Assembly (NCBI RefSeq): GCF_006345805.1
Contig: NC_042997.1
Location: 56,978,001-57,042,000, forward strand
Source: Octopus sinensis
Lineage: Eukaryota
Length of the DNA stretch: 64,000 bases
Direction: 5' to 3'
In this document: positions 21,366 to 63,926 of the stretch, piece by piece
Layout of the letters: every line of letters begins with the position of its first letter
Numbering within the stretch: position 1 is the first letter of the stretch
Translations under genes and position numbers: made by a program
Notes under the pieces: generated by a model
What the model was told of the DNA's origin: nothing
The model's input: the letters and a program-made list of their open reading frames with translations, nothing else
The model's database searches: none

Positions 21366-21568
21366 TATCTGTTGCGTTGCATTCTTTCCTTCTGGGGCTG
21401 GCCGATTCAGAGCAGATCTCAGTATTAAACAGCCGAAATTTGCAATGATGAATCGGTTTCTGACTGAAGAATGAAGGCTTTGAATGACCCGTCTGTTTTT
21501 TATGTTCGTCCCTTCGTGTATTTCACGTTATTTATATTTATGTATATAAAGTTTTATTCTATATATAT

Positions 21569-23964: not shown

Positions 23965-24360
23965 TCATCATCATCATCATCATTTAACATCCGCTTTCCA
24001 TGCTAGCATGGGTTGGACGATTTGACTGAAGACTTGCGAACCAGATGGCTGCACCAGGCTCCAATCTGATCTGGCAGAGTTTCTACAGCTGGATGCCCTT
24101 CCTAATGCCAACCACTCCATGAGTGTAGTGGGTGCTTTTACGTGCCACCGGCACGAGGGCCAATCTGGCGGTGCTGGCAACAGCCATGCTCGAAATGGTG
24201 CTTTTTACATGCCACCTGCACAGGGGTTAGTCCAGCAGCACTGGCAATGACCTCGCTTGAATGTTTTGTTCATGTGCCACCGGCACAAGTGCCAGTAAGG
24301 CGACGCTAGTAACAATCACGCTCAAATTGTGCTTTTTACGTGCCACCGGAATGGAAGCCA
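23965..24360 (-). mobile_element. RTE LINE 3' UTR copy
   Basis: (CAT)n tail followed by the family sequence with four tandem modules. Confidence 0.85.
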
Positions 24361-32178: not shown

Positions 32179-32356
32179 TTAAGTAGTAGGATATTGAGTA
32201 GGATATTGAAAAACATCAATACAGGCGAGAGTGAGAAAGAAACGAAGAGGGTTGTCTTGGATTATGTGTTAGAAACAACAGTCAAATCTCCCTTAAATCA
32301 CTTACTTTTTCCTCTGAAAATATTAACAATTAAAAAAATATTTCTACCGAAAAGGC

Positions 32357-35208: not shown

Positions 35209-35529
35209 GAAAAGGCTCCTCTCATGGTTTTGAAGTGTCAAAAATATGGCCAAAATTGATCCGAAGTGGGATTAGTGGGGTTATACAAAAAGATTTCAAA
35301 TCCTTTTTTTTTTTCATACAAAGATGTGTCCACCCCCCACCATCCATCATTTCGAAGGCCGTAGTTTAAAAAAAAAATAGGAAAAACCCGTCAAAACGGA
35401 GTAGTTCCAACTTATTTGGTCTTCCTGATCCGAAACTCTTTTTCCTACGTACTCGGAAAAAATTTCCCCCCACAAATTTCTTTATAACCGTAATCTATGC
35501 CGTTTGAAAGGTATTTGTATAAAATTTCA

Positions 35530-35880: not shown

Positions 35881-36444
35881 TTCAGATAATTTTCTAAGGA
35901 ATTAAAATAATTTCACTTTTTTTCTTTCTTTTTTTTTCTGTAAAAAAGTCTGTTTTGATTTTAACAACTGCAACAAAGGACGAAAGAAAAAAAAAACCTT
36001 ATCCGCTTCAGATTGTTTTTTTTTTTTGTGCTAATAAGAGATTTCGGTCAAACTCTAGTGTTTGACCTAGATTTCTACGTTGTTGGATTAAATAGGGGCC
36101 AAATGTTTCCTCATATTTCAATCCATCCTCTTACACAGCGATATATTAGGTCTTAGATACACGATGTCTGAACTAAAAAGATGGGATTATCACAGCTAGA
36201 ATATCCTTGATCATACGTTTGTCTACTCGATCACAATAAACGACTTCAAAAATTCAGAATAGCTTCTTTGTAACATGAGACCGAGGAAAATAAGAGACAA
36301 ACACAAGCGTTCAAGAGTTAAACGACACTTTTCTGAGACGCTGCTCTTTTTTATGGTTTTTCAGAAGCATTTTTCAAACCAAGACGATTTTATTACTATT
36401 ACAAACGGAATGACTTTTATAGATTTTATAAAAAATTTTAAACG

Positions 36445-36690
36445 ATGGTGCGACATAAAACATTGAAAAGGTTTACCCCTAAAGCCAACAGTTCTAAGGC
36501 AATCCACTCTGAACAATCTAATCGCCGGAAAATCCATATGGATTCATTAGAATGTAAGAGTAAATTCTGCCAGTGTTGGAAAGATGATAAAGATAGCAAA
36601 CTACCAAATGCTGAAACAATCACCGCAAAATTACAAGTTAACAAAATGAAAAAAGAAGTGGTCCCAAAATTCAATAATGCCACACAGAAT
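36445..36690 (+). CDS. Putative first coding exon of ankyrin-repeat gene (82 aa)
   Basis: ATG-initiated open frame MVRHKTLKR...KFNNATQN ending exactly at a phase-0 gtaagt donor, which matches the phase-0 exons downstream. Confidence 0.6.
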
Positions 36691-37481
36691 GTAAGTTTTT
36701 TTAATCTTTAATGTAAAACTAGTTTTAGGATTTGTATTTCATTTGGTGGGCCGATAAAATACTAGTCAAATCTGAGGTGTATTAAATCTACTTCGTCTCT
36801 TCAACAAAATGTATTCTGTTTAAAATCGTTTTTTAAACTTAGACCAATTATTCCAGAAAGAAACGCAACAATTATAACGATGAAGGGAAATTAACTATAT
36901 AAGGAAATACTTAGCCTGTATATATTCAATTAGTTGTTAAATTCATGGATTTTGGAAATATTTATTACCTATTCTAATTAAATTATTTAATTGAATCTAC
37001 ACAATGATTCCTAAACACAGGTATCATGGCCGTGAATTTTTAGGGAAAGGGAACAGATGATTATACAATATAAACTTCACTTCTTTATAAGTGCTCTATT
37101 CAATAACTTACAGGGCATAATTTAAAAAGAAAAATGTTCCAGAATTTTATCTTGCGTCATACTAACGTAATACCAGGACTTGTGTTATTGACAAGCGATA
37201 GCTCAAGAAAGAGCCTGTTATAGCTTTTGTTAAGCTATACAGAAAAAACTCAATGGAGAACCTGACTGTATTGGTGAAAGATTTATTTAGTTACATTTAG
37301 TTAAACACATGAGAACGTGAGCCATCGATCAACTCGTGCTTCGTAGATGTCCCGCCTAATCGGAAGTTCACTTCAGTACAGACCAGCTCCTTAATTAGCC
37401 CACAGCGAAGTTCCTGTCTACATTTCGTCCGTCATAAATCCTTAGACAGTGCCCTACACTGTCGGCAATTGAGCGGTGTTT

Positions 37482-38270
37482 GGATCTTTTCCTTTTGAAC
37501 GGCACTTTGTAACATAATTTCTAGGTAACTAAAAAGTTTTAAACTTCGTATACTGGTAGAACGTGTTTATAAAACATCATTTTCTCTTGGCTTTATTGAA
37601 AAAATTCTATAGGTTGTAAGATATTTCGTCTAAAATTTCTAGCATTTCGGCAATTTTAACCAATCGCTGACGTCCATTTAGGTAAACAACATTCTGTGCA
37701 TAATGAATATGTCCCTCCTTTAAGAAACAGATTGGGTTTATTTACATTTATGAAGAAAAAAGATACCCTTCCCCCACCCCTAACCCTAAATCTAAAATAG
37801 ATTGAAATGCAATAGATCGATACTAGGGTTATAATTATGGGTAACAATTTCATACGACACCGCAACGGAAAATGGGATTTTTTTCTAGCGGTGTCAAAGG
37901 AAAATGTCACCCATAATTATGGCCCTAGTATCGATCTATTGCATTTCAATCTATTTTAGATTTAGGGTTAGGGGTTGGGGAAGGGTATCTTTTTTTCTTC
38001 ACAAATGTAAATAAACCCAATCTGTTTCTTAAAGGAGGGACATATTCATTATGCACAGAATGTTGTTTACCTAAATAGACGTCAGCGATTGGTTAAAATT
38101 GCCGAAATGCTAGAAATTTTAGACAAAATATCTTACAACCTATAGAATTTTCTCAAAAAAGCCAAGAGAAAATGATGTTTTATAAACACGTTCTACCAGT
38201 ATATGAAGTTTAAAACTTTTTAGTTACCTAGAAATTATGTTACAAAGTGCCGTTCAAAAGGAAAAGATCC
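37482..38270. mobile_element. Palindromic MITE, Merlin-like (family 2)
   Basis: Ends GGATCTTTTCCTTTTGAACGGC...GCCGTTCAAAAGGAAAAGATCC, arms about 380 bp, 8-bp TSD cggtgttt/cagtgttt. Confidence 0.9.
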
Positions 38271-43549: not shown

Positions 43550-44286
43550 GATCATCATCATCGTTTAACGTCCGCTTTCCATGCTAGCATGGGTTGGATG
43601 GTTTGACTGAAGTCTGGCGAACCAGATAGCTACGCCAGGCTCCAATCTGATCTGGCAGAGTTTCTACAGCTGGATGCCCTTCCTAATGCCAACCACTCCG
43701 AGAATGTTGTGGGTGCTTTTACGTGCCAGTCAGGTAGTACTGGCAACAGCCACGCTCAAATGGTGCTTTTTATGTGCCATCTGCACAGGAGCCAGTCCAG
43801 CGGCACTGGCAACGACCCTAATCGAATGTTTTTTCATGTGCCTCCAGTATAAGTGCCAGTAAGGTGATGCACGTAATGATCACGCTCGAATGGTGCTATT
43901 ACATGCCACTGGCAAGGAAGCCAGTTTGTTGCTCTGGCAACAATCACGCTCGGATGGTACTCTTAGCACTCTTCTAGCACGGATGCCAGTCATTGAATTT
44001 GATTTCGATTTCAATTTCCCTTGCCTCAACAGGTCTTTGCAAGCAGAGTTTAGTGTCCAATGAAGGAAAGGTATGCATTATATAAGTGGGCTGGTTACAC
44101 CCCTGGCATTGGCCACGAGGTTATGGTCTCACTTGGCTTGCCGAGTCTTCTCAAGCACAGCATATTTCCAAAGGTCCTGGTCACTAGTCATTGCCTTGGT
44201 GAGGCCCAATGTTCGAAGGTCATGCTTCAGCACCTCATCCCAGGTCTTCCTGGGTCTACCTCTTCCACAGGTTCCCTCAACTGCTA
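43550..44286 (-). mobile_element. RTE LINE 3' end (ORF C-terminus plus 3' UTR)
   Basis: 44160-44286 matches 24950-25076; (CAT)n tail at 43550. Confidence 0.9.
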
Positions 44287-45495: not shown

Positions 45496-46699
45496 TCAGT
45501 CTGTATCTTTTCCGAAGTTGGCTCAGTTAACACCAATTATACCTTCTATAAACCCTTTCTCTCTCTACTTTGTATTCCTTCTTTCCATATGCATACGTAT
45601 CTATGCGTGAGCGTATGTATACAATTAAATATCTTTGTTTGTAAAAATATTTTTATATGTGATAAAGCCTGTTGTTGACACTTTATTAATACATTCTACC
45701 CTTCCCTTTAAAGGTGTATCTGATAATTAAATTTGTTGAAGAGAAATGTTCGTTTCATCTTCACATATTTCTCTTGCAGTTTTAACACCACAAAATCATT
45801 CGAAACTATATATATATTTATTCTAACTTGAAATTAATTCATTTGGCTGTAAGGTGAATAATGTAATTATAATTGCATCGATAATTTCAAACCTAAACAA
45901 TCGGTTAATTAATGCTGAATTTAGATTGTATGCAAAATGTCAAGATAATGAGACCCAACTACGTCAAATAGCGTCTATATGTTTGTTCAGCCCACCCATT
46001 CTATTTAGAGTTTTCACTCTAAAAATATTTTACAGCAAGACTATGGCTGTGTGGTTAAGTTCAGTTCGCAGTCAAGTGATTTGGGGTTCAGTCCTAGTGC
46101 GCAGCAGTTTCCATCTCATGCATTCAGTTACAAGCCATTGAAAGACGAAAACTGCACGGAAAATATGTTTAAAAAGCCCCCCAAAAAAACTAGCTTCCAG
46201 GAATGTGTTTAATATGTAAATTGGTATATCCAATGACGTTGCACCGCTGTATGTGGTGACTATTTGGGCAATGATTTCGTGGATGATTGATAGGTAGGAT
46301 GGATGCTGATGAAGGAGCAAAAACTCTCGAAGTGTGGAATATGCGCCCATTACACATTTTTTCATCTTCGATCTCATTGTTTGTTTACATCTTACGTATC
46401 GGATACGAAACGTTATAACAAAGTCAGTACTGGAGTTGATTTCATCGGCCAGAACCTTCAAGGCCGTGCCCCTGGAGAACTGCAGCCCAATAACTGGAAT
46501 AAGTGAAAAAATGTATTCTAATGCATAGAACATGATACACAGGATTTGGGAAAAATTTAAAGATTGACTGAAATCGTTCAGAAAGACGTGTAAAAAAAAA
46601 AAAAATTGAAAGGATTTGTTTATCATTGAATGAAGTGTGTAAAATAAAAGTGATAGCAGGGTGATGGTTGAACTTATTACCTGTAATCCAAGAGTATTT

Positions 46700-47959: not shown

Positions 47960-48713
47960 CCTATTCGCAACGTAGCTTGTCTTCTGTGACATTAATACGA
48001 GGCTATTTTCCTTTCGAAGAAACTTTTTCATCGATATTCTGATCAAAAGCATTTTAAAAGTTTCTTTTTTATTTAAAAAATAAATGTATTCACTTCAAGC
48101 ACTAGCGAAGAAATATTTTTAAAACAATGATTTTAGAAGCAGCTCTATTTAATCAGATAGCGACGTTTCATGTACAAAGACAGTTAAAATTCTTTGACAA
48201 TTTTTTCATTGGAAAGTGAAAATGATATTGCTGAAATACAGGATGGAAATTGAACTTCTAAAAAAATCACATTAAAACTAGGGGTCGTCTTATATACCCC
48301 CTTTTAAAATCTGAACATTGTAAACCACTCGCATAGCCTATTCGCAACGTAGTTTGTCTTCTGTGACATTAATACGAGGCTATTTTCCTTTCGAAGAAAC
48401 TTTTTCATCGATATTCTGATTAAAAGCATTTTAAAAGTTTCTTTTTTTATTTAAAAAATAAATGTATTCAGTTCGAGCACTTGTGAAGAAATATTTTTAA
48501 AACAATGATTTTAGAAGCAGCTCTATTTAATCAGATAGCGATGTTTCATGAACAAAGACAGTTAAAATTCTTTGACAATTTTTTCAGTGGAAAGTGAAAA
48601 TGATATTGCTGAAATACAGGATGGAAATTGAACTTCTAAAAAAATCACATTAAAACTAGGGGTCGTCTTATATACCCCTTTTAAAATCTGAACATTGTAA
48701 ACCACTCGTATAG
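47960..48713 (+). repeat. 377-bp tandem duplication
   Basis: Units 47960-48336 and 48337-48713 both begin cctattcgcaacgtag and are nearly identical. Confidence 0.92.
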
Positions 48714-50685
48714 ATCCTATGGTTCCACAGCGCAGTATTTTCAACTGATACTTGCACACATCGGCGGGGAACATCGTAAAACACTCACATAGATCCTATG
48801 ATATTTTCTACTGATACTTACTGGATTAATAGTAAGATTATATTAAAATAACAGCACAGCAAATTTAGCGGACAGACACCAGTGCCATTCGCAACAGCTG
48901 ACGGACAGAAAATGTAAACAATCAGCCCATTGAGCCGGGTCCGTTCTGTTTACACTGCCTCATTAGAGTGCTCTCTCATACAGCGTTCAGCAAGCTTAGG
49001 GCTTTTGGTAACTAACCTACCTGTTACGGCATATTAGTAGCATGTATCGAGGTCAAACTAAAGGGTTTGACCCCAGCAAAAAAAGAAAAAAATTTAGTGT
49101 AATAGGTGTAAAACAACTTGCTGTAAACGAATATGAAAAAAAATGCGCGCTCGCAAACGGGGTGAGGTGGGGGAGAGGACTTGGAAAATTCACATCGTCA
49201 GACCATGACCTTTAAACTCTAGTGTTTGACCCGATCACATTCGTTTACTACATGTTGTTTTACACCTATTAGACTATTTTGATTTTGTTTTTGCTCGGGT
49301 CAAACACTGGAGTTTAAAGGTCAAGGTCTGACGATGTGAATTTTCCGAGTCCTCTCCTCCACCCCCTCGTTCGCCAGCGCACATTTTTTTTTATATTCGT
49401 TTACTACATATTGTTTTACACCTATTAGACTATTTTTTTTGCTTTTACTCTGGTCAAACACTAGAGTTTAAAGGTCAAGGTCTGACGATGTGAATTTTCC
49501 GAGGAACATTCACGATGTGAACTTTCCGAGTCGTCTCCCACCCTGAGCGCGCATTGTTTTCTCCATATTCGTTTAAAGCAAGTTGTTTTACACCTATTAC
49601 ACTACTTTTGTTTTTTTTTTGCTCGGGTCAAACCCTTTAGTTTGATCTGTACCGATACCTTCTGGAACTGGTCAGTTCATGTCAGTCAGACTAATCACAA
49701 TAAACCTTACTTTCAAACATTTACAGACAGGGTTTCTTGGAAAGGATCAAGTTGTCATTCTTTCATAAGCAGTAGTACTCTCACTGGGTGAACATTAATT
49801 TCCAACAACTGTAAAACCCCCTCATGGCTTAAAGAGATAAACGAAGGAAATATAAAGCTGGTTTTAAGCTGAAAGTGGTAGCATACACCAAGTCCCACAG
49901 CAACCGAGCTGCTGCGAGAGAATACAGTGTAACCGGGAAGATGGTAAGAATTTGGAGATTAAATGAAGACTTATGAAGGAGTATACCCAGGACTGAATGT
50001 GCAATGAGAGGAGGCACTGCACACTGGCATGATTCCAGAGAAGCATGTAACAGACCAGGTCTGTGAGCAGCGTCAAAATGGATAGGTTATTTCAAGACCT
50101 ATAGTCTCGTGAAACACAACAAAATTGACAAATTAAAGAAAATACTTGCAGTGTACTTTACAACAATATTTCTAATATATTACAATATCATGTTATACAT
50201 ACCGTAAGTAAATCCATTTCAAGTGAAAGGTGTTACGGTATACTTGACACCGTGTTAGTTCCTGTAAAATAACCGACATCTTAATGACGTCACTGCGGTA
50301 GTGTTTATACCAGTCAGGTACGTTTGATGTGAATTATAGTAGGTAATTTACAATATTTGCCCACTTTTTGAAAAGAACTGAATAAATTATAAACAACCAG
50401 CACTGCAGAATTGTTGCATACAAAGTTTACTGATTGAGACATAGTTAAAATGTTATTGAAACAAGAAAAGCAGAGGCTCTCTATTGTAACACAAGAAAAG
50501 CAGGGGCCGCTAGGGAAACTATAGCTCACCCGACCTCCTTTAGCTATGAACCTCGCGCCTTCGGCACCCGAGCTATTTTCTACGATAACTTGGGTAAGTC
50601 TTATATAGCAGGTATAACTCAAAACCCACTTTTTAAATGGAAATCTTGGCAATCGTCCTGCACACTCAGTCATGTTATAGAGTTC
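48608..50685 (-). mobile_element. Unclassified interspersed repeat, copy A (interrupted by a MITE)
   Basis: Reverse-complement match in blocks to 61875-62990; ORFs 49864-50076(-) and 62071-62262(+) are homologous. Confidence 0.85.
49051..49647. mobile_element. Modular MITE, Merlin-like (family 3)
   Basis: Ends GGTCAAACTAAAGGGTTTGACCC...GGGTCAAACCCTTTAGTTTGATC, 8-bp TSD tgtatcga/tgtaccga. The empty site in copy B has a single tgtactga (minus strand, about 62484-62491). Confidence 0.88.
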
Positions 50686-51491
50686 AATGGAAAACATTTG
50701 CAGATCTAAAATCGAAGGAAAAATGTTTGTTTGGATAATATATATTTTGTAGCATCTGCTTCTTTCTTTTTTGTCATGTTTCTTTCCTTTATTAGAAGAA
50801 AACCTAACACAACTTCCTACACATGGAAGATACTGTCAAAGTCGGCCCAGGAAACATTAGATTTGTTTTCTCCAACAGAAAGTCAGCATGCGAACTTATC
50901 CAAATTATAAATTAATAGAAATAGTAATCGTTATCGTTAACAAGAATTCAACGCTAACAATAAGAATGTGAACTTTGCTGAAAATTTTGAATAATTCTGT
51001 CACCTTGATGAGACTATACCTCACTTTTTGTTTGGCGGGTTATCTCCAGGTTATCTTTGCTCAAACAAACCTAGGTGCTAGTGCGAACTGGACTTGCGCC
51101 CATACCTATTATCAAAAAGCATTCTAACTTTGAAAAATATATTCGTTTAGACTACATTTTCTAATTTTTCTAAGACAACAAGGTGCGAGTAGAGGAAGGT
51201 TTGGTCGTTATTCCCAGCTGTCGAGCGCGTGCAAGGAATCCCTAATTTGCTTAACCTTTCATTGGGATGATAAATATTGTCGATGTTTCACTATCTCGTC
51301 ATTTTCTAATTAGCAATTTTTTTACTTTTTAACGATGGTTTTTTTCTTTGGTGCTTGTTAAATTTAGACTGCCTTTTCAACTGAACATCATAAATATAAT
51401 CATCTCCACAGACGCAAATAAGCGTACAGTTATATAAAGATGCATATAGACACAAACTAACTTCTTGTCATTTTTCTGTAACACTTTCTAG

Positions 51492-51581
51492 GTGGTAGCC
51501 TTACTTTCAAGTAATAACCCCAGTGAGGTATTAAGAGAATTGTTAACTTCCGGCTGGGACATAAATGAGAAGAGTGTAATT
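51492..51581 (+). CDS. Ankyrin-repeat gene exon (90 bp, phase 0-0)
   Basis: tttctag acceptor, gtaagt donor. Encodes VVALLSSNNPSEVLRELLTSGWDINEKSVI, whose LLxxGxDIN end joins DGATAL of the next exon to form an ankyrin repeat. Confidence 0.8.
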
Positions 51582-51989
51582 GTAAGTAACTCAATTTTAT
51601 GAATTAATTTGTGCACTAGAAAGTATGTTAAAATCATTTCGGAATCTTTTACTCAAGCTTTGTCGCCCAAATGATTTGGTGTGGTTTGAGTTACGTAAAT
51701 GCTCCTCTGTGTCTGTCCCGCTTTCTTTTGTTTATACTAGTTCTTCTCTGAGAGCAATATTCTCCCCATTTCAACGTGGAGTACTTCCAACAGAGAGGTG
51801 GATGAAGTTCTACAATTACTGAGGGGCTTGGATTGTTAGTCTTAGAGCAAGATGGATCAATACAGAAAGTTCGGGACAATTTCCAGTCAAAACACCTTTT
51901 TTTTTTACTGTTATTTTTTTCAAACCAATTTGATCAATTTTGAAAGTGTACCTTACTTTCTGTGAATGCTAAATTTTTGGAGATTGAAT

Positions 51990-53015
51990 AGATGCATTGC
52001 CTGTTACGAACATCGGCTTACTTAGCTCGGATGAGCTCCACATCTCCAGCACTGATAGAGTCGGAGCTGATGTATGTGGGGGGAATGAGGTGTTGTTCTG
52101 CTAATATACTCGATTCCGGACATTTTTATGGATTAACAATTTCACTGAGCGTGGGTTACTTAGCTCAACGCAACGAGTTAAATTTGTCAAACGAACCCTA
52201 GTCAGAATATATGATCCTTAGGTCCTGGAGCTAAGTTTGTCCCGGTGGAGAAACGAAAAGAGATCCATTGAGATTACTTTTAGAAGCAGGTGCCTCATAT
52301 AGGACGCCGGTATAAGCGACTCTTTCGCTCGATCACACATCCTTAATGTTACAGCGGATGTGGCGGTTACTGCACCCTTAGCTAAATCAAATGAGATACT
52401 GAAGTATTTTAATTTGACTTCAGTTCCAGTCTTGCTGAATCGGTCGCAAACCCGGAGAGAAAAATTATTGGATCTTTTCCTTTTGAACGGCACATGTCAA
52501 CACATCTTTTTTCTTCGCCAATGTAAATAAACCCAATCTGTTTCTTAAACGAGGGACATATTCATACAGCACGGAATGTTGTTTACCTAAATGGAGGTCA
52601 GCGATTGGTTAAAATTGCCGAAATGCTTGAAATTAAAGTGGAAATATGTTACAACATATAGAATTTTCTCAATAAAGCCAAAAAAAAAAAATGATGTTTT
52701 TTAAATACATTCTACCAGTATACGAAGTTTAAAAGTGTTTACTTAACTAGAAATTGTGTTGACATGTGCCATTCAAAAGGAAAAGATCTAAATAATTAAA
52801 TATTATCCGCCGCTATCAATTTTATGCCGGTCGCCGTTGAGACCTCAGGTATTCTTGGACACCGCGCTGGCGATTTCATCTGCAAAATCGGGATAACTGC
52901 AGCCAGTCTTAGAGATGGGCCCAACAAGTTTGGGTGGCTGCTGCAGCGTCTGTCACTGACCATCTCTGTTGTAACACCATCACTGTCATGCTCGCTGGGC
53001 ACAGCTGAATACGCT
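51990..53015 (+). mobile_element. RLE-type (CRE/R2/R4-like) non-LTR retrotransposon C-terminal remnant
   Basis: Degenerate Zn-knuckle region (RCCSANILDSGHFYGL), DVAVTAPLA, REKLL and MPVAVETSGILGHRAGDF...LLQRLSLTIS...LGT match the restriction-like endonuclease tail. Confidence 0.7.
52470..52789. mobile_element. Internally deleted copy of Merlin-like family 2
   Basis: Same GGATCTTTTCCTTTTGAAC ends with most of the left arm missing; 8-bp TSD aaattatt/aaataatt. Confidence 0.88.
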
Positions 53016-54034
53016 GTTCTGGGGTGCACAACCCGTTACCCTCCACTTATTTTTTGCTGCTTAATACTCTGGAAAGACGCGATGCCAATGATGGTAAAAC
53101 TTTGTTGGCTGCAATCCAGCTCCTTGAACACTTCAAATGTCACAAGCTGAAAAATGTAATTCACTTACAAATGAATTTTTATTTACATAAAGGTTGGATT
53201 CACAATTTAATTACAAGGAAAAAAGGAAAAATTTCCAGCGCGCTCTAGTCTTACAATCATCTTCACAATGCCTTGAGTTTAGGATTCCCTCAAAATTTGT
53301 TATAAGTGCAGTATGTAATTGAGAGTGTGCATGCCTTATTTTTTAATTTAGTTATTTCTTTTTTTTTTTTCGCTAATTTTTATTGTCTGATTTTGTAACC
53401 TGTTCTTTAGTAGTTTTACAATTAATTAATGTTAAAAATGAATTTATATTACTTTTGTAAATTGTGCTTTTTAGCAGTTTTGTAATTAATTACAGCTACA
53501 GAAATTATTTGAAAATTCTGTTTCGTTGATAATTATATAATTGAAGAAATTGTTGTCTCACTGCCAACCTGTTACAGTGTTCATTTGCTTCGGATGGCAA
53601 ATCTTTCAATACTTATCCTCGACAGTAATGTAGAATTTAAGATTAGGCCTATAATATAGAGATAGCCATAATTTACGCTCGCACGAGATGCATAACAAAG
53701 TCCCAAAATGAGTTAATATAATTTAATTGGTATCATCAACATTTCCATGCCTGTGTGGGTCAGACAGACTTTATTGGGGAAGATTTTCTATGGTCGGATG
53801 CCCTTCCTGTTACCAACCCTCACCTGTTAGCTAACAAGGCAATATTTTTCCATGGTCAGACATGTTCTTGCAGAATATTGGAAATTAATGACACTCCTTG
53901 TATAACAGTGACACTCTTTTACATACAGAAATTTCTTTACCGCATCGTAACAACCCCGACAAACAAGCAACACCCTGAGCCAAACTAGAGCTACATCTAT
54001 GCCTGACAATGATCTGCGTTTGATGGGATTAGGA

Positions 54035-54250
54035 AGGGTAAATCCACTGTGAAATGCTTGAAAAAGACCACATATTCAATGCAGAACTTTACGTGGTGTG
54101 CTTTTTCAACAAGACAACGCTCGCTCCTGTGTCGCTAATTTGACCAAAAATACTATTCAAGAGCTCGATTGGAAAGTCTTGCCGCATCCATCATATTCTC
54201 TTGATATAGCTCCTTCAGATTATATTCACCTCTTTCGGTTGCTCTGGTAG
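54035..54250 (+). mobile_element. mariner transposase C-terminal remnant
   Basis: FQQDNAR...IQELDWKVLPHPSYSLDIAPSDY. Confidence 0.85.
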
Positions 54251-55537
54251 GAGCTCTATTTCCCTTTGGCGGAACACTTATCCATCTAAATGTGATTTGG
54301 TTGGTGGAGCCAACCACTATGCCTTGTGCATAGATACACATTACCGCCTATCACAAAGTAGCAGGAAAATTCTAGTAAGTTCTAACCAGGCCTCCAAGAG
54401 AAGTAGGTGTACTGTTATATCGCTGTCTGAGCATAACTCTATCATGTAGACAACATCTAATGGAGAAACACTCTAGAACTAAATAACTATTTATGGACTG
54501 TTCGAAAATTTATCATGTTCATATTTTACAATATGCAGTAACAGTAAGTGTTACATAAATAATATGCTGCATACACCTTTTTCTGGATTTGTGACCCTAT
54601 AACGAACTTCTCTTCTGTTCACTTAGGACACTGTTAAACCATATCTTTGAATGCTATACCCCGTATGCTTGCAAGCAAACCTTGACTGAATGCTATCATC
54701 ACCTCCTCTTATAATAAATCATTATTGTTCTGTTAAACCTTCTGAATGTTGTCTATTATTTCATTACAAGGTATTATACTACCGTTGTTAAAAAAAATAT
54801 GATTTTATTTTAGTGCCTCTTCACTAAACTCGGGTCAAGTTGTAAACATTAACCAAAAATTGTACGGTTTCTGTCTAACCTTTCTTTCTCTCTCTGTTGA
54901 TTGTTTTCAACCATCACCAAGTACCACCACCATCGCCACCACAGGTGTCGTACACACGCCATTCAGACTTCTATCGCCACCACCATCAATACCTTTGTCT
55001 TCACCGCCTTCCCCTCTACCATCACCACTGTCTTTCACATCGCTTACTCCACCACTCCACCTTTATCACAATTACAGCTCATACTATTACTATCACCCCA
55101 TTGGCGGAAAGCGGGGTGCGATCCACATTCTTTACGTCTGCCCACCCCATTACCATCACAACCATCAATCTACTACCGACTTTATGCCTACTATTACTTT
55201 CACCCCATCACAAAGAATTGTGGAAGAGTAAATTTCTTTATTTTGGGAAACCGGATTCCCCCTCCCCCACATATTCTGGAAATCCTTTTTTTCCCCCGTT
55301 GAATGAATTCTGGTGACCTGCTAATATGCTACAAAACCCTTTTGGGATCTAGGAAACCGTCTGGGGTGAAGTGGAATGGAACCCTTGGAAATTTTACCCA
55401 TTCCCAACATTTTAGAGAAATACATTTTCCAGAGTGTGAATTACATGGTACGTTATTAAATTTATAAAGAATGTGACATTTATATTGTGTATATTTTACA
55501 CTGTATGTATTTTTTCCTGAAGTAGTGTGTGTGTATG

Positions 55538-55584
<47 letters not shown>

Positions 55585-56525
55585 GCGTGTATGTATATGT
55601 AGACAGGTAAAAATTTACCAACAAAGTACTACTTACCTCTTTGCTGTCAAATAAATGGATTCTCAACAAAATACACTTTTTGGTTAATGTTCACATTATT
55701 ACCCAGAAACGAAATCAGAAAAAAAAAAATAGTGCAACGGGTGTAAAACAAAAAAAGGTGTCGGAAACGAATATGAAAACAAAAATGCGCGGAAAGCAAC
55801 AGGGTGGGGAACTTTGAAAAATTCACAAGTACCGAGTTTTTCCCTCAAAACTTTTAGGAAAATGGGGTTTTTTTTATATGAAATTTTATATAAATACTTT
55901 TCAAATGGCATACATTACTATTATAATGAAATTTGTGGATAAAATCTTTTCGGAAGGGGTGGGGAGAGGACTAGGGAAAATTCACAAGATTTTGATTTTT
56001 TCCCTCGTAACTTTAAGGAAAATGAATATCTTTTAATGAAATTGTATATAAATACCTTTCAAACGACATGCATTATGGATGCCTAATCTCATGATTCCTC
56101 CCACTCCCCGGAATCAATGGAAATTTTTTTTTTTTTTTGTTGAATGAATTCCAGTGACCTTAATATGCTACAAAACCCATTTTGGGGTCCAGAAACTCAG
56201 AAACTTCACCCCAGCCCCATTTTCATATTTTTTTTTTGTTATTTCTTTCTTTTCCCATAATTTTAGATAATATCTTGCAGAAATACGTTTTCAAGAGAGT
56301 GTGGATTACATTAGATTGATAATTCAAAGAAGTTTGAAATGAATAAGTGAAAATGCAGAGGTTATAGAAGTTAGTGGTAACAAAGTGTTGAGAAATAATG
56401 AACGATAAATTCATCTAAAAAAACACATTAGAGTTTTCGTATGTATGTGTGAAACGGAGTAAAAGTATAATATTAAAACAAAATATCTTTTTCCTACCTC
56501 TTAAAATCACTGGATATAATATATT

Positions 56526-57274
56526 TAATAATCCCAGATTGCAGAATAGATTTGAAAAACTAAAGTATTTTCCCTTTGCAATTTTTGGTGCCAAAATGAG
56601 TTTCATTTTTGGGGGGAGAGAGAGAGAGAGAGATACTGGCATGGTTGGACTGTTTGACTGAGAACTGGCAAGCCAGGAGGCTGCAATCAGGCTCCAGCCT
56701 GTTCTGGCAAGGTTTCTACAGCTGGATGCTCTTCCTAATACCAACCACTCCAAGAGTGTAGTGGGTGCTTTTCAAGTTCCACTGGTACAGGGGCCAATCA
56801 GATGGCACTAGCATCAATCACGCTCAAATGGTACTTTTTACGTGCCACCAGCACTGGCACAGCTGATGCCAATACCAGCAGCACATAAAAAGTACCATTC
56901 GAACATGATTGATGCCAGTGTCATGTGACTGGCCCCTGTACCAGTGGAACTTGAAAAGCACCCACTACACTCTTGGAGTGGTTGGTATTAGGAAGGGCTG
57001 TAGAAACCTTGCCAGAACAGACTGGAGCCTGATTTCAGCCTCCTAGCTTGCTAGTCCTCAGTCAAACAGTCCAACCCATGCCAGCATGGAAAGCAGACGT
57101 TAAACGATGATTGTTACACCATTCAAAGTTTAGGTAAACTTTGTCACTCACTCACATTCTCTTTCTCTCACTCTCTCCCACCCTGTCACAAAAATGAAAC
57201 TCATTTCAGCACCAAAAATTGCAAAGGGAAAATGCTTTAATTTTTCAAATCTATTCTGCAATCTGGGATTATTA
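56526..57274. repeat. 750-bp imperfect palindrome folded through an RTE 3' UTR copy
   Basis: Outer arms 56526-56615 and 57185-57274. Inner LINE halves are mirrored about cagctg at 56860-56865. Confidence 0.9.
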
Positions 57275-57280
57275 TATATA

Positions 57281-57802
57281 CTAGCAAACCTACCCATCTA
57301 TGATGGGAAATGAAAGGAGGGTGGAAAATAACAACTTTAAGTATGAATGTATTTATACTGAAATATGGCATGGGAAATGTTGCAAAATATAAATAATGGT
57401 TGGTTTTTATTATATTTATGTGCAGCTCTACACAGTACATATTCATGATATTATTACATTTACAAAACTTCTTTGTAAATGATATTTTGTGTTTGATCCG
57501 CACTAATTTTCAAATGCTCAGCTCATAATGACATGTGTAAACATTGGAGTGGGCAGAAACACACAAACACAATCTAAAGTCTGGTCCTGAGACTTGTTGG
57601 CTGTGAATGAGAAGGCTAGTTTGATGGGAAACTGCCTGCATTATAATTGGAAGGGAAACTGGTTGTCGCAAGATACCAGTGGTATCTGAGGTGTGAATAA
57701 GCGTTTACCACTGTGAGAGCCAATCGCTATCACTGCCTCGATGACGTGAGAATTGAGTTGCGTGATAATGTATCTTGTTCCATTGCAATGTCCTTTGGCA
57801 GG
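57281..57802 (-). mobile_element. Helitron 3' fragment (PIF1-like helicase C-terminus plus 3' terminus)
   Basis: GHCNGTRYII, IPLV, FPFQL*CRQFPIKLAFSFTANKSQDQTL and NIIYKEVL*. Then hairpin cccatc-ata-gatggg (57293-57307) and terminal CTAG followed by T. Confidence 0.88.
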
Positions 57803-60089
57803 GTCAAAATTTTACCCATTCCCAACATTTTACAGAAATACATTTTCCAGAGTGTGAATTACATGGTTCGTTATTAAATATATAGAGAATGTGACATTTA
57901 TATTGTGTATATTTTACACTGAACATATCTTCTGAAGTCATAGTGTATATAAATGTGCGTGTGTATATATATATACAACATGTGAGGTATTGGTATCTAT
58001 AAAACCCAAAGAGTGACAGGTAAGTAGTAAGCGCTATGGACAGACCGGAGTTAAACTCTTGGTTTGATAGTGATATGTGTGAGGTGTCTAATGTGGGTAG
58101 CATGTATATATATATATTAGACAAAATGAGATAAAAAAAAGCCAAGGCTTTGTTATCTCATTTTGTCTAATATATATAATAGCATGTATGTGTATGTAGA
58201 CAGGTAAAAATTCACCGACAAAGTACTACTTACCTCTTTGCTGTCAAATAAACGGATTAATTCTCAACAAAATACACTTTTTTTCTCAACAAAATTTTAC
58301 AACTTTATACCAGCATTTTAGGAAGAAAAAAACAAAAATATTTCGCACCCAAACTAATTTTTGTGTGTTGGGGAAGAGCAAAAATAAAAGTTGTCTCTCT
58401 ACAAAGAAGCAGTTTAAAATAAATATATCTTAATTGTTTTGTGAGAAAGTATATATATTCTGATGATAAAATATAGTATCTTTTAAAACATCCTAAATTT
58501 TCGACTATATCTTGTGTGTTTAAGAAAAAAAAAACGTTTTTTCTCTTATACTACTGTGTGTGTGTGTGAGAGAGAGAGTGAGAAAGCGGCATTTGCTGAG
58601 CTGTCTCTAAGTATAACGATGTCCTGTTCCACCTGAACTTGTGCAATGTTACACCTCTGAATTTCTTTTTGATTGTGATAATTAATCAAGGGGTTTAGTC
58701 GTTACTGCCAAAATTAATTTCTCTTACATTTTCTCTTTCAATATCTAATTAAAAGAGAGAATATATTGTTACCAACAATGTTGAAACTTTAGTAACTTGA
58801 TTGCTCTGTTATTGAACCAGGATTTTAATTTCATTTGGTACACACCTTGCTATCATTTATATGGAGAATTGCAATCGTGGCATATAAATAAAACTTATTT
58901 TAATAGAAATTTTATGAGTACATCCGTAAGTGGTTTTCTTGCACACCAACACCTCCCCACCCACATATATGCACACAGATACACATGGATGAAGTCCCAT
59001 TTTGGAAGTATGTTAAAGTTTTTATTATTTTGGAATGAAGAACACAAACATAGGTGCTGAGCCAGTGACTAAACTTGTAGTATTTTGTTGAGATTAATCC
59101 AATGAATTGACAACAAGATAATTGCTTCTATCAGAATCATTTACCTTTAAAGTGAAAAAGCAAAACAACAGGTATGTAAAATATATTTTGTGTACTTCTT
59201 TCTCTGTTTATATGGATAAGCTGTAGAAGTTGTGCATGTGCGCACACACAAGCACAAAAATTCTCCAGACATTTAGCTGTTATTTTTAGCATATCAAGTT
59301 TTGTGGTGAGGGCTTTACCATGCCATGGTCCTTTTACTTTTAGACAGCAGGATGGGGTGTGGATCAGTTTTGGAATTTTTCATTAAAAATTTGAAATTAA
59401 ATTTTTTTTCACATATTTTTAATCTCTATTTTCCCACATAGATTGGAAAAAAACCCTCAAAAAATTAAAAATTGGTGGGTGGGGGTGGCGAGTAGAATTA
59501 AAAATTTGTAAAACATGGTTTTTTGCATATTCGGAATCTCCGTCATTGAAGACATAGGAATCCGGTGAAAAAAAAAATTCTGAAAGGTCAGTTTAGAAGG
59601 GGTGGGGGGACTGTGCTCCAGGTCAGCCAAAAGGTATGACCATTTTTCTGAATAATAAATAAATTTCAACATAATTATCCTTGGCATTTTCAAGAATGTA
59701 TCAACAAAATTTCATTTAAAAATATACATTAAGAAAATATTTATGAGGAAACAGTCAGTGGGACATCCAACTATAGTTTAACTCCCATTTGTCATCTCAC
59801 GTCAAGTTTATATTTAATTAATACCAGCTTACAATGCCCAGCGAATATGGTGGGTGAGGCATCATTTCCCATTCAAACTGCTCCAACCTTTCAAATGTCA
59901 TCCTAGCTGTATGTGGCTGAACTTTATCCTGATAGAATACCTTTTGTCTTGAAACCAAAGATGGTCATTTTTCTTCTAGCACTGACTGAAGCTGCTTGAA
60001 CTGCTCACAGTAGGCCTCCTTTGTTATCGTTTGGCTTGGGTTTAAAAGTTCAAAGTGGACTAAACCTTTCATATCCTACAAAACAAATA

Positions 60090-60720
60090 ATAACACCATA
60101 TAGGTGAAGACCTTCTTAAGCCTGGGGTACTGGTGTTTCCCCTTTCCCTACCCACTGTCTTCGGTGCTTGACTTTTTTATACCGAACCCATTTCTCGTCA
60201 CCAGTCACTATTCGATCCCAAAAAAGGTTCATTTGTGAGATGTGACAGCAAAGAAGATCACACATTCACTCTCTGCATGCAACTTGACTCGGAAAATTTG
60301 TAAGGAACCCATGGACCCAATTTACTGACTTTTCCGATTGCACACAGGCATCGCTGAATAGTTGACTGACCAAATCCAAGCTTCTCTGCTAGCTCCTCAA
60401 CAATTATTATGGAATTTTGTTCCACCAGGCTTTGCAGGACGTCCTCATCGAGACCTACAGATCTTCCAGGAGAAGGCTCATCTTCTAGGCTGTAGTTTCT
60501 GGCTCAGAATTTCTGGAACCGCCGTTGACACTAGCTTACGCTTATTGTCCAATCCCCATATACTGCATTAATAGTCCTCGCACTTTCTGTTACGTTGTTC
60601 CCTTTATTGAACTCGTGAAGCAAAATATGCTGAATATGCTCCTTTGTCACTTCCACTATAGCTTTGAAAAAAATAACTTAAAATTGAACTGCACTCTTCA
60701 AAACTTGCACTAAGAATAAG
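60090..60720 (-). mobile_element. mariner transposase N-terminal/central remnant
   Basis: VEELAEKLG..STIQRCL..IGKVSKLGPWVPYK and RIVTGDEKWV. Confidence 0.85.
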
Positions 60721-60992
60721 GACAAGGTAAAATTACTACCTGCTTTTATAGAAAGTTAATGCAGGTAGTTTATCCCACCTCTTGCCTTTTAGTTCATGCA
60801 ATTGAAAAAGCCGTATTATTTATGGGATGACCCAATATTTATACTATTTATACATATAGAATTTTTTCAGCCATTTACATCTGCTATACTTTAATAACTA
60901 TGGTGAAATTGTTTTGACTTAATGTCTATATAAATAAAATAAATCAATAAACATTATATTAATTATACGTTATGATTTATTTTTTTAAACAG

Positions 60993-61091
60993 GATGGTGC
61001 AACAGCTCTGGCGGAAGCCATTGCACACAAACGTTTTGATGTGGTCAAATGTTTGATCACTAATGGGGCCGATATTTCTATCAGAGATGAT
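60993..61091 (+). CDS. Ankyrin-repeat exon (99 bp, phase 0-0)
   Basis: aaacag acceptor, gtaag donor. Encodes DGATALAEAIAHKRFDVVKCLITNGADISIRDD (33-aa ankyrin consensus). Confidence 0.92.
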
Positions 61092-61299
61092 GTAAGAATG
61101 ACATTTTGTTAAATAATTATTCAGGATTTTCTAAGCACAAAGACTTCTTTATTTACAAACACATGCACACACATAATAACGTTTTTTATATAAATCACAT
61201 TAAGGCTATATTTTTGTTAGAATGTTGAATAATCAGACAATTGATCTCCTTTATAATAAATACACAGTTGTTGCTTAGATTTCGACAGTCAAGTGATGA

Positions 61300-61720
61300 T
61301 TTTCATGGATATCAGCATGCACTATCATATTGTCATATATTGATGTGAAACTTTGTTCAGATTTGGCATCAGCCTTGGCGGATGTTCTTCCCAATTTGTT
61401 AGCACAAGACATTGCACATGGCTGAAACTATTCCTACCATATTCCTGAAGCAGCACTAAAGTTTCCATAAAGGTTTTTCCCAATTTGTGACAAAATTTCA
61501 CACAGTCACACTGCTCTTCCATATCCTTTGCTCAATTTGCAGCAAATCGCCAAATGCACTTGATATGTTCACTGTAGTACCTATTAATTGATGACTAATT
61601 TGGCATGATATGGTAATTATTTGACTGAAAGTCAAGGTTACTCATACACAAAACTGAGATTAAGAGCTTTTATTGACTGCTACACTATTTCAGTTCGGCC
61701 AGTTTCTTGTTAGACACAAT
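61300..61720 (-). mobile_element. mariner 5' end remnant
   Basis: MEEQCDCVKFCHKLGKTFMETL resembles the mariner N-terminus (EQRxxIKFCxKLGK). Confidence 0.7.
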
Positions 61721-61874
61721 ATATTTATATTCATTGAAAGTAAAAACATGACATCTGTGTAATTTTATGAATAGTCTTGAGTTTGTAAATCAAATTCAAG
61801 TAATACCTTAATTCTATAGTCACCATAGGTACTTTTTTGGTTTGTGTGATGTAAAAATACCGTATATGCTGGCG

Positions 61875-62990
61875 TTGTAATACAACTTGGTGTACAAGGC
61901 AAATGCCAGGATTTCCATTTAGAAAGTAGGAATTGAGCTATACCTGCTATATAAGATTGACCCAAGTTATCGTGGAAAATAGCTTGGGTGCCAAAGGCAT
62001 GAGGTTCATAGCTAAAGGGGTTTGTTTTTTTGTTTCACAAGACTATTGGTCTTGAAACAACATATCCATTTTGACGCTGCTCACAGACCTGGTCTGTTAC
62101 ATGCTTCTCTGGAATCATGCCAGTGTGCAGTGCCTCTCAGTCCTGGTTATACTCCTTCATAAGTCTTCTTCCAAATTCTTACCATCTTCCCGGTTACACT
62201 GTATTCTCTCGCAGCAGCTCGGTTGCTGTGGGACTTGGTGTATGCTACCACTTTCAGCTTAAAACAGGTTCATATTGCCTTCGTTTATCACTTTGAGCCA
62301 TGAGGGGGTTTTACAGTTGTTGGAAATTAATGTTCACTCAGTGAGAGTACTATGCTTATGAAAGAATGACAACTTGATCCTTTCCAAGAAACCCTGTCTG
62401 TAAATGTTTGAAAGTAACCAGTAACTGTAAGGTTTATTGTGATTGGTCTGACTGACATGAACCAGCCAGTTACAGAAGGTATCAGTACATGCTGCTAATA
62501 TAACAAGCAGGTTAGTTACTGTAAACTACACTTGTACTGAAAGCCCTAATCTGGCTGAATGCTGTATAAGAGAGCGCTCAAATGAGGCAGTGTAAACAGA
62601 ACAGACCAAGGGACCAGGCTGAATAGGCTGATTGTTTACATTTTCTATTCGTCAGCTGTTGCAAGTGGCAACTGGTGTCTGTCTGCTAAGTTTGCTGTGC
62701 TGTTATTTTGATATAATTAACCTAATTTCTCAAACATACATGTAAGTATTAGTAGAACCACATGATCTATGCAAGTGGTTTACGGAGTTCTCCATCAATA
62801 CATGCAAGTATTTGTTGAAAATACTGCGCTGTAGAACCATAGGATCTATGCGAGTGGTTTACACTGTTCTCCATTGATATTGGTGTTACTCTAAGCCACA
62901 GGAAGTTAAGGTTTAGAATTTATACGGGGTATATAAGACAACCCTTAGTTTTGGGGTGATTGTTTTTTTGAAGATCAAATTCCATCCTGT
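61875..62990 (+). mobile_element. Unclassified interspersed repeat, copy B
   Basis: Inverted homologue of 48608-50685 that lacks the MITE and about 400 bp of copy A (50130-50530). Confidence 0.85.
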
Positions 62991-63827: not shown

Positions 63828-63926
63828 CAAGGCAAAACACTTCTTCATTTAGCAGTTGAAGTACAGTGGGAGAAATGTGTCTTGTTATTGATCAATAATG
63901 GTGCTTCAGTGAACTCATGTGACAAT
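63828..63926 (+). CDS. Ankyrin-repeat exon (99 bp, phase 0-0); gene continues past the window
   Basis: ctttcag acceptor, gtaagt donor. Encodes QGKTLLHLAVEVQWEKCVLLLINNGASVNSCDN. Confidence 0.93.

What the first reader, a model, noticed from the sequence alone, without database searches (positions are those of the whole stretch)
48608..62990. Inverted repeats symmetrically bracket ankyrin exons 2-3: candidate 189-nt stop-free circular RNA
Seen: copy A (inner end about 50685) and inverted copy B (inner end about 61875) share about 1.1 kb of complementarity. They lie about 810 nt upstream of the exon-2 acceptor (51492) and about 780 nt downstream of the exon-3 donor (61091). Both exons are phase 0-0, total 189 nt and have no in-frame stop, though also no in-frame ATG. 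Known: flanking reverse-complementary intronic matches promote back-splicing and exon skipping, and are ADAR substrates. Inference: this locus could yield an exon 2-3 circle with an endless ankyrin frame, or an in-frame skipped isoform that changes repeat number.
Basis: partly seen in the sequence, partly recalled or inferred. Interest (0 to 1): 0.75.

Follow-up and report, generated by a model that had tools for sequence, protein, structure and literature searches.

The report
Transposon relics flanking two ankyrin exons
Two decayed, oppositely oriented copies of a transposon relic sit in the introns on either side of two ankyrin-repeat exons and could pair in the pre-mRNA to favour a circular RNA or exon skipping, but this arrangement is common and well understood, and nothing here shows that it is used.

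Summary
About 1.07 kb of copy A (48617-50660/50685, +) is reverse-complementary to copy B (61870/61895-62989, -). Identity at aligned bases is 84% in the outer part, 95% in the core and about 85% in the inner part, with perfect runs of 96 and 65 nt.

The arms lie 807 nt upstream of exon 2 (51492-51581) and 784 nt downstream of exon 3 (60993-61091). With exon 4 (63828-63926), these exons translate into a clear ankyrin domain (Pfam Ank E = 3.5e-16). Exons 2 and 3 total 189 nt. Frame 0 has no stop and no ATG.

The arms are transposon relics. Both carry a broken ORF for a Brinker-type DNA-binding domain (PF09607, E = 2.9e-9). Copy A also holds a nested 597-nt MITE and a second 409-nt extra segment.

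The predicted RNA duplex is very stable, and no other inverted pair links intron 1 to intron 3. So the structural prerequisites for back-splicing or skipping are met.

However, about 65% of this repeat-rich window is bracketed by some inverted pair. The "endless frame" follows automatically from phase-0 exons whose lengths are multiples of 3. Exon 1 is only a candidate, and no expression data could be reached.

Verdict: a real but ordinary feature. It is an untested candidate member of a well-known class, and of low interest.

The parts
48617..50685 (+). Copy A of the repeat (upstream arm, in candidate intron 1). Homology to copy B starts at TA|CAGGATGG (TA = 48615-48616). It fades between 50660 and 50685. 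It contains two A-only segments.
61870..62989 (-). Copy B of the repeat (downstream arm, in intron 3), reverse-complementary to copy A. In B the outer, core and inner blocks are nearly contiguous.
49833..49973 (+). Decayed ORF in copy A encoding a Brinker-type helix-turn-helix (RDKRRKYKAGFKLKVVAYTKSHSNRAAAREYSVTGKMVRIW...), preceded and followed by stop codons.
   Evidence: (PF09607, E = 2.9e-9, 37.2 bits, cut-off 23.4)
62150..62266 (-). The same decayed BrkDBD ORF in copy B. The 93 nt encoding FKLKVV...VRIW (62171-62263) are identical to 49863-49955 in A.
   Evidence: (E = 1.2e-5)
49051..49647 (.). MITE nested in copy A. It has 22-nt terminal inverted repeats GGTCAAACTAAAGGGTTTGACC (21/22) and an 8-bp target-site duplication, TGTATCGA (49043-49050) and TGTACCGA (49648-49655). 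Copy B shows the empty site. As RNA it folds on itself from first to last base.
   Evidence: MFE -322 kcal/mol, z = -28
50125..50532 (.). Second segment present only in copy A (about 409 nt). No target-site duplication was recognised, so it is either an insertion in A or a deletion in B.
47960..48713 (.). Tandem duplication of 378 bp (2.0 copies, 96%) that spans the outer end of copy A. It gives a third partial copy of the arm's first ~100 nt at 48237-48319.
51492..51581 (+). Ankyrin exon 2 (90 nt, phase 0-0), a degenerate first repeat: VVALLSSNNPSEVLRELLTSGWDINEKSVI.
60993..61091 (+). Ankyrin exon 3 (99 nt, one 33-aa repeat, phase 0-0): DGATALAEAIAHKRFDVVKCLITNGADISIRDD.
63828..63926 (+). Ankyrin exon 4 (99 nt, one 33-aa repeat, phase 0-0): QGKTLLHLAVEVQWEKCVLLLINNGASVNSCDN. 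The gene continues beyond the window.
36445..36690 (+). Candidate exon 1 (ATG at 36445 or 36538, donor CAGAAT|gtaagt in phase 0). Outside copy A it is the only ATG-started open frame between 30000 and 51491 that ends at an in-phase GTRAGW donor. It is unverified.

Best explanation
Shown: two old, diverged copies of a non-autonomous DNA-transposon relic lie in opposite orientation in the introns flanking exons 2 and 3. All that remains recognisable of the relic is a broken N-terminal Brinker-type DNA-binding ORF. The host gene is an ankyrin-repeat gene with one repeat per exon. After the two copies arose, copy A acquired a nested MITE and a 378-bp tandem duplication at its outer end. It also differs from copy B by a 409-nt segment. 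The central ~415 nt of the arms stayed or became nearly identical (about 95%). Inferred: the arrangement is a neutral by-product of transposon accumulation in a repeat-rich genome, not a selected device. If the gene is transcribed through copy A, the arms can form a roughly 1-kb imperfect RNA duplex that loops out exons 2-3. The nested MITE would be extruded as its own hairpin. By the established mechanism of intronic reverse-complementary matches, this would raise the chance of low-level back-splicing (E3 donor to E2 acceptor, giving a 189-nt circle once the 9.4-kb internal intron is removed). It would also raise the chance of E1-E4 skipping, which removes 63 aa (about two repeats) in frame. 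The duplex itself would be a substrate for dsRNA-editing or dsRNA-cleaving enzymes. Translation of the circle is unlikely because it has no in-frame AUG.
For: Complementarity and its extent. Duplex stability: ddG of -329, -553 and -136 kcal/mol against about -14 for shuffled partners. Transposon origin of the arms: BrkDBD PF09607, E = 2.9e-9 in A and 1.2e-5 in B, with stops and frameshifts in both. Later events in copy A: MITE with TIRs, 8-bp TSD and an empty site in B; tandem duplication. MITE self-folding with its first base paired to its last. Exons: canonical AG/GT sites and a joint ankyrin domain, Ank E = 3.5e-16 and Ank_2 spanning residues 7-93 across both junctions. A/B is the only intron 1 to intron 3 inverted match, with no partner within its own intron. 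No other ankyrin-like ORF lies between E2 and E3. Repeat-rich background: 65% of positions are bracketed by some inverted pair, and there are many other repeat families. Mechanism: in C. elegans, deleting either reverse-complementary match abolishes the circle and reduces the skipped isoform (PMC8330042). ADARs act on such matches and modulate circRNA levels (PMC8938519).
Against: No RNA data were available, so transcription, back-splicing, skipping and editing are all unobserved. Exon 1 is only a candidate. If the true upstream exon lay between 50686 and 51491, copy A would not be intronic. The 11.2 kb between the arms includes a 9.4-kb internal intron. Intron 1, which carries copy A, could therefore be spliced out co-transcriptionally before copy B is made. 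The uneven identity of the arms (95% core against about 84% flanks) is not explained by simple neutral decay of one duplicated unit. It could hint at gene conversion or at constraint. Only two copies of the element are seen and none was found elsewhere. 'Two independent insertions' therefore cannot be separated from 'one local inverted duplication'.
Confidence: 0.7

Rival explanations
1. The inverted arms have no effect on RNA processing. Possible reasons: the gene is silent or a pseudogene; copy A is not part of the transcript; or intron 1 is removed before copy B is transcribed, so the duplex never forms. In that case the arrangement is purely genomic debris.
For: No homologue of the spliced E2-E3 peptide is present in the protein database, which includes transcriptome-derived proteins. 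Exon 1 is unverified. The arms are 11.2 kb apart with a 9.4-kb internal intron. Bracketing by inverted pairs is the norm in this window.
Against: Three collinear exons with canonical splice sites and an intact ankyrin frame argue for a live gene. The E2 acceptor implies an upstream exon. The database contains no proteins of this species at all: the best match to its LCAT-like exon is 90%. The missing hit therefore says little. Long multi-exon circles with long internal introns are common in animals (established knowledge).
Confidence: 0.25
2. The arms matter at the DNA level rather than the RNA level. In this reading they arose by one local inverted duplication and are kept similar in their core by gene conversion. 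They could also mediate inversion of the 11-kb segment carrying exons 2-3 by non-allelic homologous recombination.
For: Only two copies are seen, both at this locus, and none elsewhere. The core is 95% identical and includes 96- and 65-nt perfect runs, while the flanks are about 84%. Such unevenness is what patchy gene conversion produces.
Against: Homology stops sharply at both ends, at a TA|CAGG... boundary in both copies. The arms also carry a transposase-type ORF relic. Both points fit discrete mobile-element copies better than an arbitrary duplicated segment. Neither inversion nor conversion can be tested on one haplotype.
Confidence: 0.1
3. This is a selected, functional circular RNA. 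In this reading the 189-nt stop-free circle is made efficiently and translated round and round from a non-AUG start into an ankyrin-repeat polymer, or it acts as a regulatory RNA. The arms would be maintained to drive it.
For: Frame 0 of the circle is open with no stop. A/B is the dominant cross-intron match. The core of the arms is unusually well conserved. Rolling-circle translation of circles with an infinite ORF has been demonstrated with designed constructs in human cells (PMC4639774).
Against: There is no in-frame AUG. The open frame is an automatic consequence of phase-0 exons whose lengths are multiples of 3, and would hold for any run of exons in this gene. The arms are decaying transposon relics that have accumulated a MITE, indels and 16% divergence in their flanks. 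No conservation or expression evidence exists.
Confidence: 0.03

Closest known systems
Back-splicing and exon skipping driven by intronic reverse-complementary matches (human Alu pairs, mouse Sry inverted repeats, C. elegans RCMs; PMC8330042, PMC8938519)
   Same: Inverted repeat copies lie in the two introns flanking the exons that would circularise. The exons have canonical splice sites. The cross-intron pair is stronger than any within-intron pair. The arms are transposon-derived, as Alus are. The arm length (about 1 kb) exceeds the roughly 400 nt reported as sufficient for circSry and the 13-nt match that works in zip-2 (both as described in PMC8330042).
   Different: No back-splice junction, skipped isoform or editing has been observed for this locus. 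The arms are DNA-transposon relics rather than SINEs. The circle would have to lose a 9.4-kb internal intron. The organism is unidentified.
pogo/Tigger-type (Tc1/mariner superfamily) transposases with an N-terminal Brinker-type DNA-binding domain, such as the domesticated POGK (recalled from memory, not tested here)
   Same: The BrkDBD motif FKLKVV..N.RAAAREY.V....VRIW is present. Both copies begin TA|CAGG, and copy B may end CCTTG|TA, which resembles TA target-site duplications.
   Different: No DDE catalytic domain or second helix-turn-helix was detected in six-frame translations of copy B. The terminal inverted repeat is convincing for only 6 of 7 nt. The element is about 1.1 kb, so at best it is an internally deleted, non-autonomous relic.
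MITEs with 8-bp target-site duplications (hAT-like)
   Same: The nested element 49051-49647 has 22-nt TIRs (21/22), an 8-bp TSD (7/8) and a matching empty site in copy B. It also has strong self-complementarity.
   Different: The superfamily was assigned from TSD length alone. The only other TIR-like match in the window is at 36046-36067, with 3 mismatches.
Circular RNAs with an 'infinite' open reading frame translated by a rolling-circle mechanism (PMC4639774; review PMC11724312)
   Same: The circle length is a multiple of three and it has no stop in one frame.
   Different: There is no in-frame AUG, no known internal ribosome entry element, and no evidence that the circle exists.

Membership tests
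circRNA locus driven by reverse-complementary matches | Reverse-complementary sequences in the intron upstream of the first circularised exon and the intron downstream of the last | tested here: met
   About 1.07 kb of complementarity in three blocks, 807 nt and 784 nt from the splice sites. One caveat: the upstream intron is defined by an unverified exon 1.
circRNA locus driven by reverse-complementary matches | A thermodynamically stable inter-intronic duplex that outcompetes pairing within each intron | tested here: met
   ddG is -329, -553 and -136 kcal/mol against about -14 for shuffled partners. Neither arm has a partner in its own intron. The only other cross-intron matches are intron 1 to intron 2 pairs of 290 nt and 165 nt. 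The nested MITE folds on itself.
circRNA locus driven by reverse-complementary matches | Canonical acceptor on the first and donor on the last circularised exon | tested here: met
   E2 acceptor ...tttctgtaacactttctag|G; E3 donor GAT|gtaaga.
circRNA locus driven by reverse-complementary matches | Observed back-splice junction (RNase R-resistant, divergent-primer product) | not testable with these tools
   No RNA-seq resource is available. The organism is unidentified: the best relative is Logan run SRR11869394, 82% nt identity over 2.4 kb.
Ankyrin-repeat protein gene | Tandem 33-residue ankyrin repeats recognised by profile models | tested here: met
   The E2+E3+E4 translation scores Ank E = 3.5e-16, Ank_2 E = 7.9e-15 (residues 7-93) and Ank_3 E = 2.6e-13. 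It has 209,355 library relatives, none close; identities in the listed hits are 28-41%.
DNA transposon of the pogo/Tc1-mariner kind | Transposase-derived coding sequence | tested here: inconclusive
   Only the N-terminal BrkDBD relic is present. No DDE domain was found in any frame of copy B.
DNA transposon of the pogo/Tc1-mariner kind | Terminal inverted repeats flanked by a TA target-site duplication | tested here: inconclusive
   TA|CAGGATGG is present at the outer end of both copies. At the inner end, B reads ...CCTTG|TA and A reads ...TCCTG|CA, but the TIR match is only 6/7 nt and homology seems to run about 20 nt further.
DNA transposon of the pogo/Tc1-mariner kind | Multiple dispersed copies in the genome | not testable with these tools
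   Only two copies occur in the window. Nothing was found in the protein database or in JGI metagenome contigs. The rest of the genome is not available.
MITE (nested element 49051-49647) | Short non-coding element with TIRs, a target-site duplication and an identifiable empty site | tested here: met
   TIRs 21/22; TSD TGTATCGA/TGTACCGA; empty site TGTACTGA in copy B.

The most novel reading that the evidence does not exclude
The arms are maintained, through constraint or gene conversion on their 95%-identical core, because they drive an abundant exon 2-3 circle or a regulated two-repeat-shorter ankyrin isoform. The circle might even be read round and round from a near-cognate start into an ankyrin polymer.
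Probability: 0.03. Interest if true: 0.55.

Novelty: new member of a known kind. Interest (0 to 1): 0.13.

Why it matters
If the circle or the skipped isoform were found, this would be one more example of transposon-derived intronic complementarity shaping splicing, in a so far unidentified invertebrate-like genome. It would offer a tidy system, because each exon encodes one ankyrin repeat and so repeat number would be tuned by RNA structure. That mechanism is already established in human, mouse, fly and worm, so the gain would be incremental. As it stands, the locus illustrates how easily such configurations arise by chance in repeat-rich introns.

Tried and rejected
1. Finding the annotated gene or an orthologue. 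The word-indexed protein search with the E2+E3 peptide found nothing. The exhaustive HMMER search with E2-E4 returned 209,355 generic ankyrin proteins, none close (identities in the listed hits 28-41%). It gave no orthologue and no help in locating exon 1.

2. Identifying the organism.
- An exact-protein look-up of the 415-aa RT ORF found nothing.
- The LCAT-like exon matches best (90% aa) a contig from Logan run SRR11869394, which is 82% identical to window 8745-11069.
- The run accession appears in no paper. A prefix search hit only an unrelated plant study.
- Cluster members carried no organism names.
- The organism remains unidentified.

3. Showing that the arm is a dispersed family. There was no hit for the stitched transposase peptide in the protein database. 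There was none in JGI metagenome contigs by peptide patterns (one search was a format error). A 24-nt exact pattern from the perfectly conserved stretch also found nothing.

4. RNA genes. There are no Rfam families at gathering score and no tRNAs in the window, so the arms are not tRNA-derived SINEs by these tests.

5. Idea rejected: that the high-identity core is delimited on both sides by the two A-only inserts, as a conversion tract stopped by heterology would be. The right edge coincides with the 409-nt segment. The left edge (about 49707) lies about 60 nt inside the MITE site.

6. Idea rejected: that the symmetry of 807 and 784 nt is meaningful. Intron 3 is 2.7 kb and copy B fills 41% of it.

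7. The 127-aa ORF at 50314-50697 (-) inside copy A has no Pfam match.

Full report
**1. The observation**

The repeat finder lists a collinear chain of inverted pairs between 48638-50677 and 61878-62966. blastn condenses them into three blocks:
- A 48615-49005 with B 62991-62540 (81-82%);
- A 49648-50124 with B 62489-62025 (88.8% counting gaps);
- A 50533-50677 with B 62021-61878 (84-88%).

Block-wise global alignments give identities at aligned bases of 84% for the outer block, 95.2% for the core and about 85% for the inner block up to 50682. Perfect runs of 96 and 65 nt lie in the core. The homologous length is about 1.07 kb.

The exons are as described:
- E2 is 51492-51581 (90 nt).
- E3 is 60993-61091 (99 nt).
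- Both have polypyrimidine-AG acceptors and GTAAG donors.
- The 189-nt sum has no stop and no ATG in frame 0. The other two frames have 6 and 8 stops.

**2. The gene**

A third exon of the same kind lies at 63828-63926 (99 nt, cag|...|gtaagt). The joined translation of E2-E4 is an unambiguous ankyrin domain: Pfam Ank E = 3.5e-16, and Ank_2 E = 7.9e-15 covering residues 7-93. That match runs across both exon junctions. This argues that E2, E3 and E4 are spliced directly to one another.

A profile-style scan of all stop-to-stop frames found no other ankyrin-like segment between E2 and E3. The gene therefore has one ankyrin repeat per phase-0 exon and runs off the 3' end of the window.

The E2 acceptor requires an upstream exon. 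E2 has no in-frame ATG, so the start codon must lie upstream too. Outside copy A, only one ATG-initiated open frame between 30000 and 51491 ends at an in-phase GTRAGW donor. It is 36445 (or 36538)-36690. I treat it as candidate exon 1. It is not verified. With it, intron 1 is 14.8 kb and contains copy A.

No orthologue was found. The word-indexed search returned nothing. The exhaustive search returned only generic ankyrin proteins, with 28-41% identity in the listed hits.

**3. What the arms are**

Both arms carry the same broken reading frame in their best-conserved core:
- In A it is RDKRRKYKAGFKLKVVAYTKSHSNRAAAREYSVTGKMVRIW... (49833-49973, +).
- In B it is the equivalent sequence at 62150-62266 (-).

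It matches the Brinker DNA-binding domain PF09607, with E = 2.9e-9 and 37.2 bits against a cut-off of 23.4. Stops and frameshifts surround it in both copies.

No other domain appears in any frame of copy B, and in particular no DDE catalytic core. From memory, this kind of helix-turn-helix heads pogo/Tigger-like transposases.

Both copies begin TA|CAGGATGG. Copy B may end CCTTG|TA. That would fit a TA target-site duplication, but the terminal inverted repeat is convincing for only 6 of 7 nt. I therefore call the arms relics of a non-autonomous DNA transposon, with the superfamily tentative.

No further copy is present in the window. None could be found in the resources at hand.

**4. Later history of copy A**

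Copy A is 2.07 kb because it holds two extra segments.
- The first, 49051-49647, is a textbook MITE. It has 22-nt TIRs (21/22). Its 8-bp target-site duplication is TGTATCGA/TGTACCGA. Copy B shows the intact empty site.
- The second, 50125-50532, has no recognisable duplication.

In addition, a 378-bp tandem duplication (47960-48713) spans the outer end of copy A.

Folded as RNA, the MITE pairs its first base with its last (MFE -322 kcal/mol, z = -28). It would therefore be extruded as a side hairpin, leaving the A-B duplex continuous across the insertion site.

**5. Would the arms pair?**

In silico, overwhelmingly yes. The cofold energy gain over the separately folded arms is -329 (outer), -553 (core) and -136 kcal/mol (inner). 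Shuffled partners give -12 to -16.

A census of inverted matches by intron gives this picture:
- A/B is the only intron 1 to intron 3 pair, with 1113 nt aligned in total.
- Neither arm has a partner in its own intron.
- There are no intron 2 to intron 3 pairs.
- Two weaker intron 1 to intron 2 pairs exist: 37479-37764 with 52504-52792 (88%), and 43557-43720 with 56954-57111 (81%). The first of these has a nearer partner within intron 1, in the palindrome at 37482-38270.

By the competition logic established for Alu-driven circles, A/B would be the dominant looping interaction.

**6. How it most likely works**

Reverse-complementary matches in flanking introns bring the back-splice sites together. 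In C. elegans, deleting either match abolishes the circle and lowers the skipped isoform (PMC8330042). ADARs act on these matches and modulate circRNA output (PMC8938519).

This locus satisfies every sequence prerequisite. My best reading is that, if transcribed, it yields some exon 2-3 circle and some E1-E4 skipping as by-products. The skip removes 63 residues, about two repeats, in frame.

Three steps are inferred rather than shown:
- that copy A is intronic;
- that the two arms coexist in one pre-mRNA despite 11.2 kb between them and a 9.4-kb internal intron;
- that the gene is expressed at all.

**7. Why I score it low**

- The mechanism is textbook knowledge.
- Being bracketed by inverted repeats is the norm in this window. 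65% of positions lie between the arms of some inverted pair of at least 150 nt and at least 80% identity within 15 kb. Larger and fresher inverted repeats exist nearby, for example 1.3 kb at 97.8% at 32356-35209.
- The near-symmetry of 807 and 784 nt is not informative. Intron 3 is only 2.7 kb and copy B fills 41% of it.
- The 'endless frame' is automatic for phase-0 exons whose lengths are multiples of 3. It would hold for any run of exons in this gene. The circle also lacks an in-frame AUG. The rolling-circle translation documented for designed circles (PMC4639774) is therefore not a natural expectation here.

**8. What remains odd**

The arms are unevenly diverged. The core shows 4.8% substitutions, including 93 identical nucleotides over the BrkDBD peptide. 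The flanks show about 16%.

Under 12% divergence, a 96-nt perfect run has a probability of about 5e-6 (my own arithmetic). Gene conversion between the arms is the simplest explanation. A composite origin, or constraint on pairing, cannot be excluded.

This is the only feature that leaves room for the more interesting reading, to which I give 3%.

**9. Verdict**

The feature is real and was accurately described. The arms are transposon relics.

Noticed in passing
window 49645-50124 versus 62025-62492 (core), compared with 48607-49009 and 50533-50685: The arms are unevenly diverged. The core is 95.2% identical, with 96- and 65-nt perfect runs and 93 identical nt over the BrkDBD peptide. The flanking parts are about 84-85% identical. 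Gene conversion between the inverted copies is the simplest explanation, but this is unproven.
   Followed up: partly
window 49051-49647: A MITE is nested in copy A. It has 22-nt TIRs, an 8-bp target-site duplication and an empty site in copy B. Internally it is built of ~150-nt units in both orientations. As RNA it folds into a near-perfect long hairpin (z = -28). A TIR-like match with 3 mismatches lies at 36046-36067.
   Followed up: yes
window 32356-33644 and 33933-35209: A 1.3-kb inverted repeat at 97.8% identity with a 288-nt spacer. It is the largest and youngest inverted pair in the window and lies about 1.2 kb upstream of candidate exon 1. Each arm contains a copy of the ~230-bp interspersed repeat. 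It may be a foldback element or a hairpin-RNA locus.
   Followed up: no
window 37482-38270, with a third copy at 52504-52792: A palindromic element at 94.6% self-complementarity in candidate intron 1. A related ~290-nt copy lies in intron 2. This gives a weaker inverted pair that brackets exon 2 alone.
   Followed up: partly
window 1955-2200, 5655-5901, 23973-24220, 24677-24867, 32849-33074, 34495-34721, 43554-43810, 56633-56857, 56929-57111: An interspersed repeat family of ~230 bp (SINE- or MITE-like) with at least 9 copies in both orientations at 78-97% identity. It has no tRNA or Rfam match.
   Followed up: no
window 8745-11069, ORF 10002-10634 (+): The last exon of an LCAT / lysophospholipase-3-like gene (PF02450, E = 8e-23) lies on the same strand, upstream of the ankyrin gene. 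A contig from Logan run SRR11869394 is 82% identical over 2.4 kb, introns included. A closely related species has therefore been sequenced, but the organism could not be named.
   Followed up: partly
window 7337-7729 (+), 27546-28793 (-), 24920-25324 (-): Retrotransposon fragments. Two are reverse-transcriptase ORFs (RVT_1, E = 2.6e-12 and 6.3e-31). The third is a GC-rich (48%) segment whose ORF resembles the C-terminal tail of LINE ORF2 proteins (resemblance from memory; no Pfam match above threshold). 7865-8438 and 27404-28000 are 93% identical.
   Followed up: partly
window 20411-21368: An AT-rich stretch (GC about 22%) that is highly self-similar and self-complementary, resembling a satellite.
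   Followed up: no
window 46072-46626 (-): A 184-aa ORF in candidate intron 1 has a weak, sub-threshold helicase match (PF02689, E = 0.0018). It may be a Helitron or PIF1-like fragment.
   Followed up: no
window 47960-48713: A 378-bp tandem duplication (2.0 copies, 96%) straddles the outer boundary of copy A. It therefore arose after copy A was in place.
   Followed up: yes
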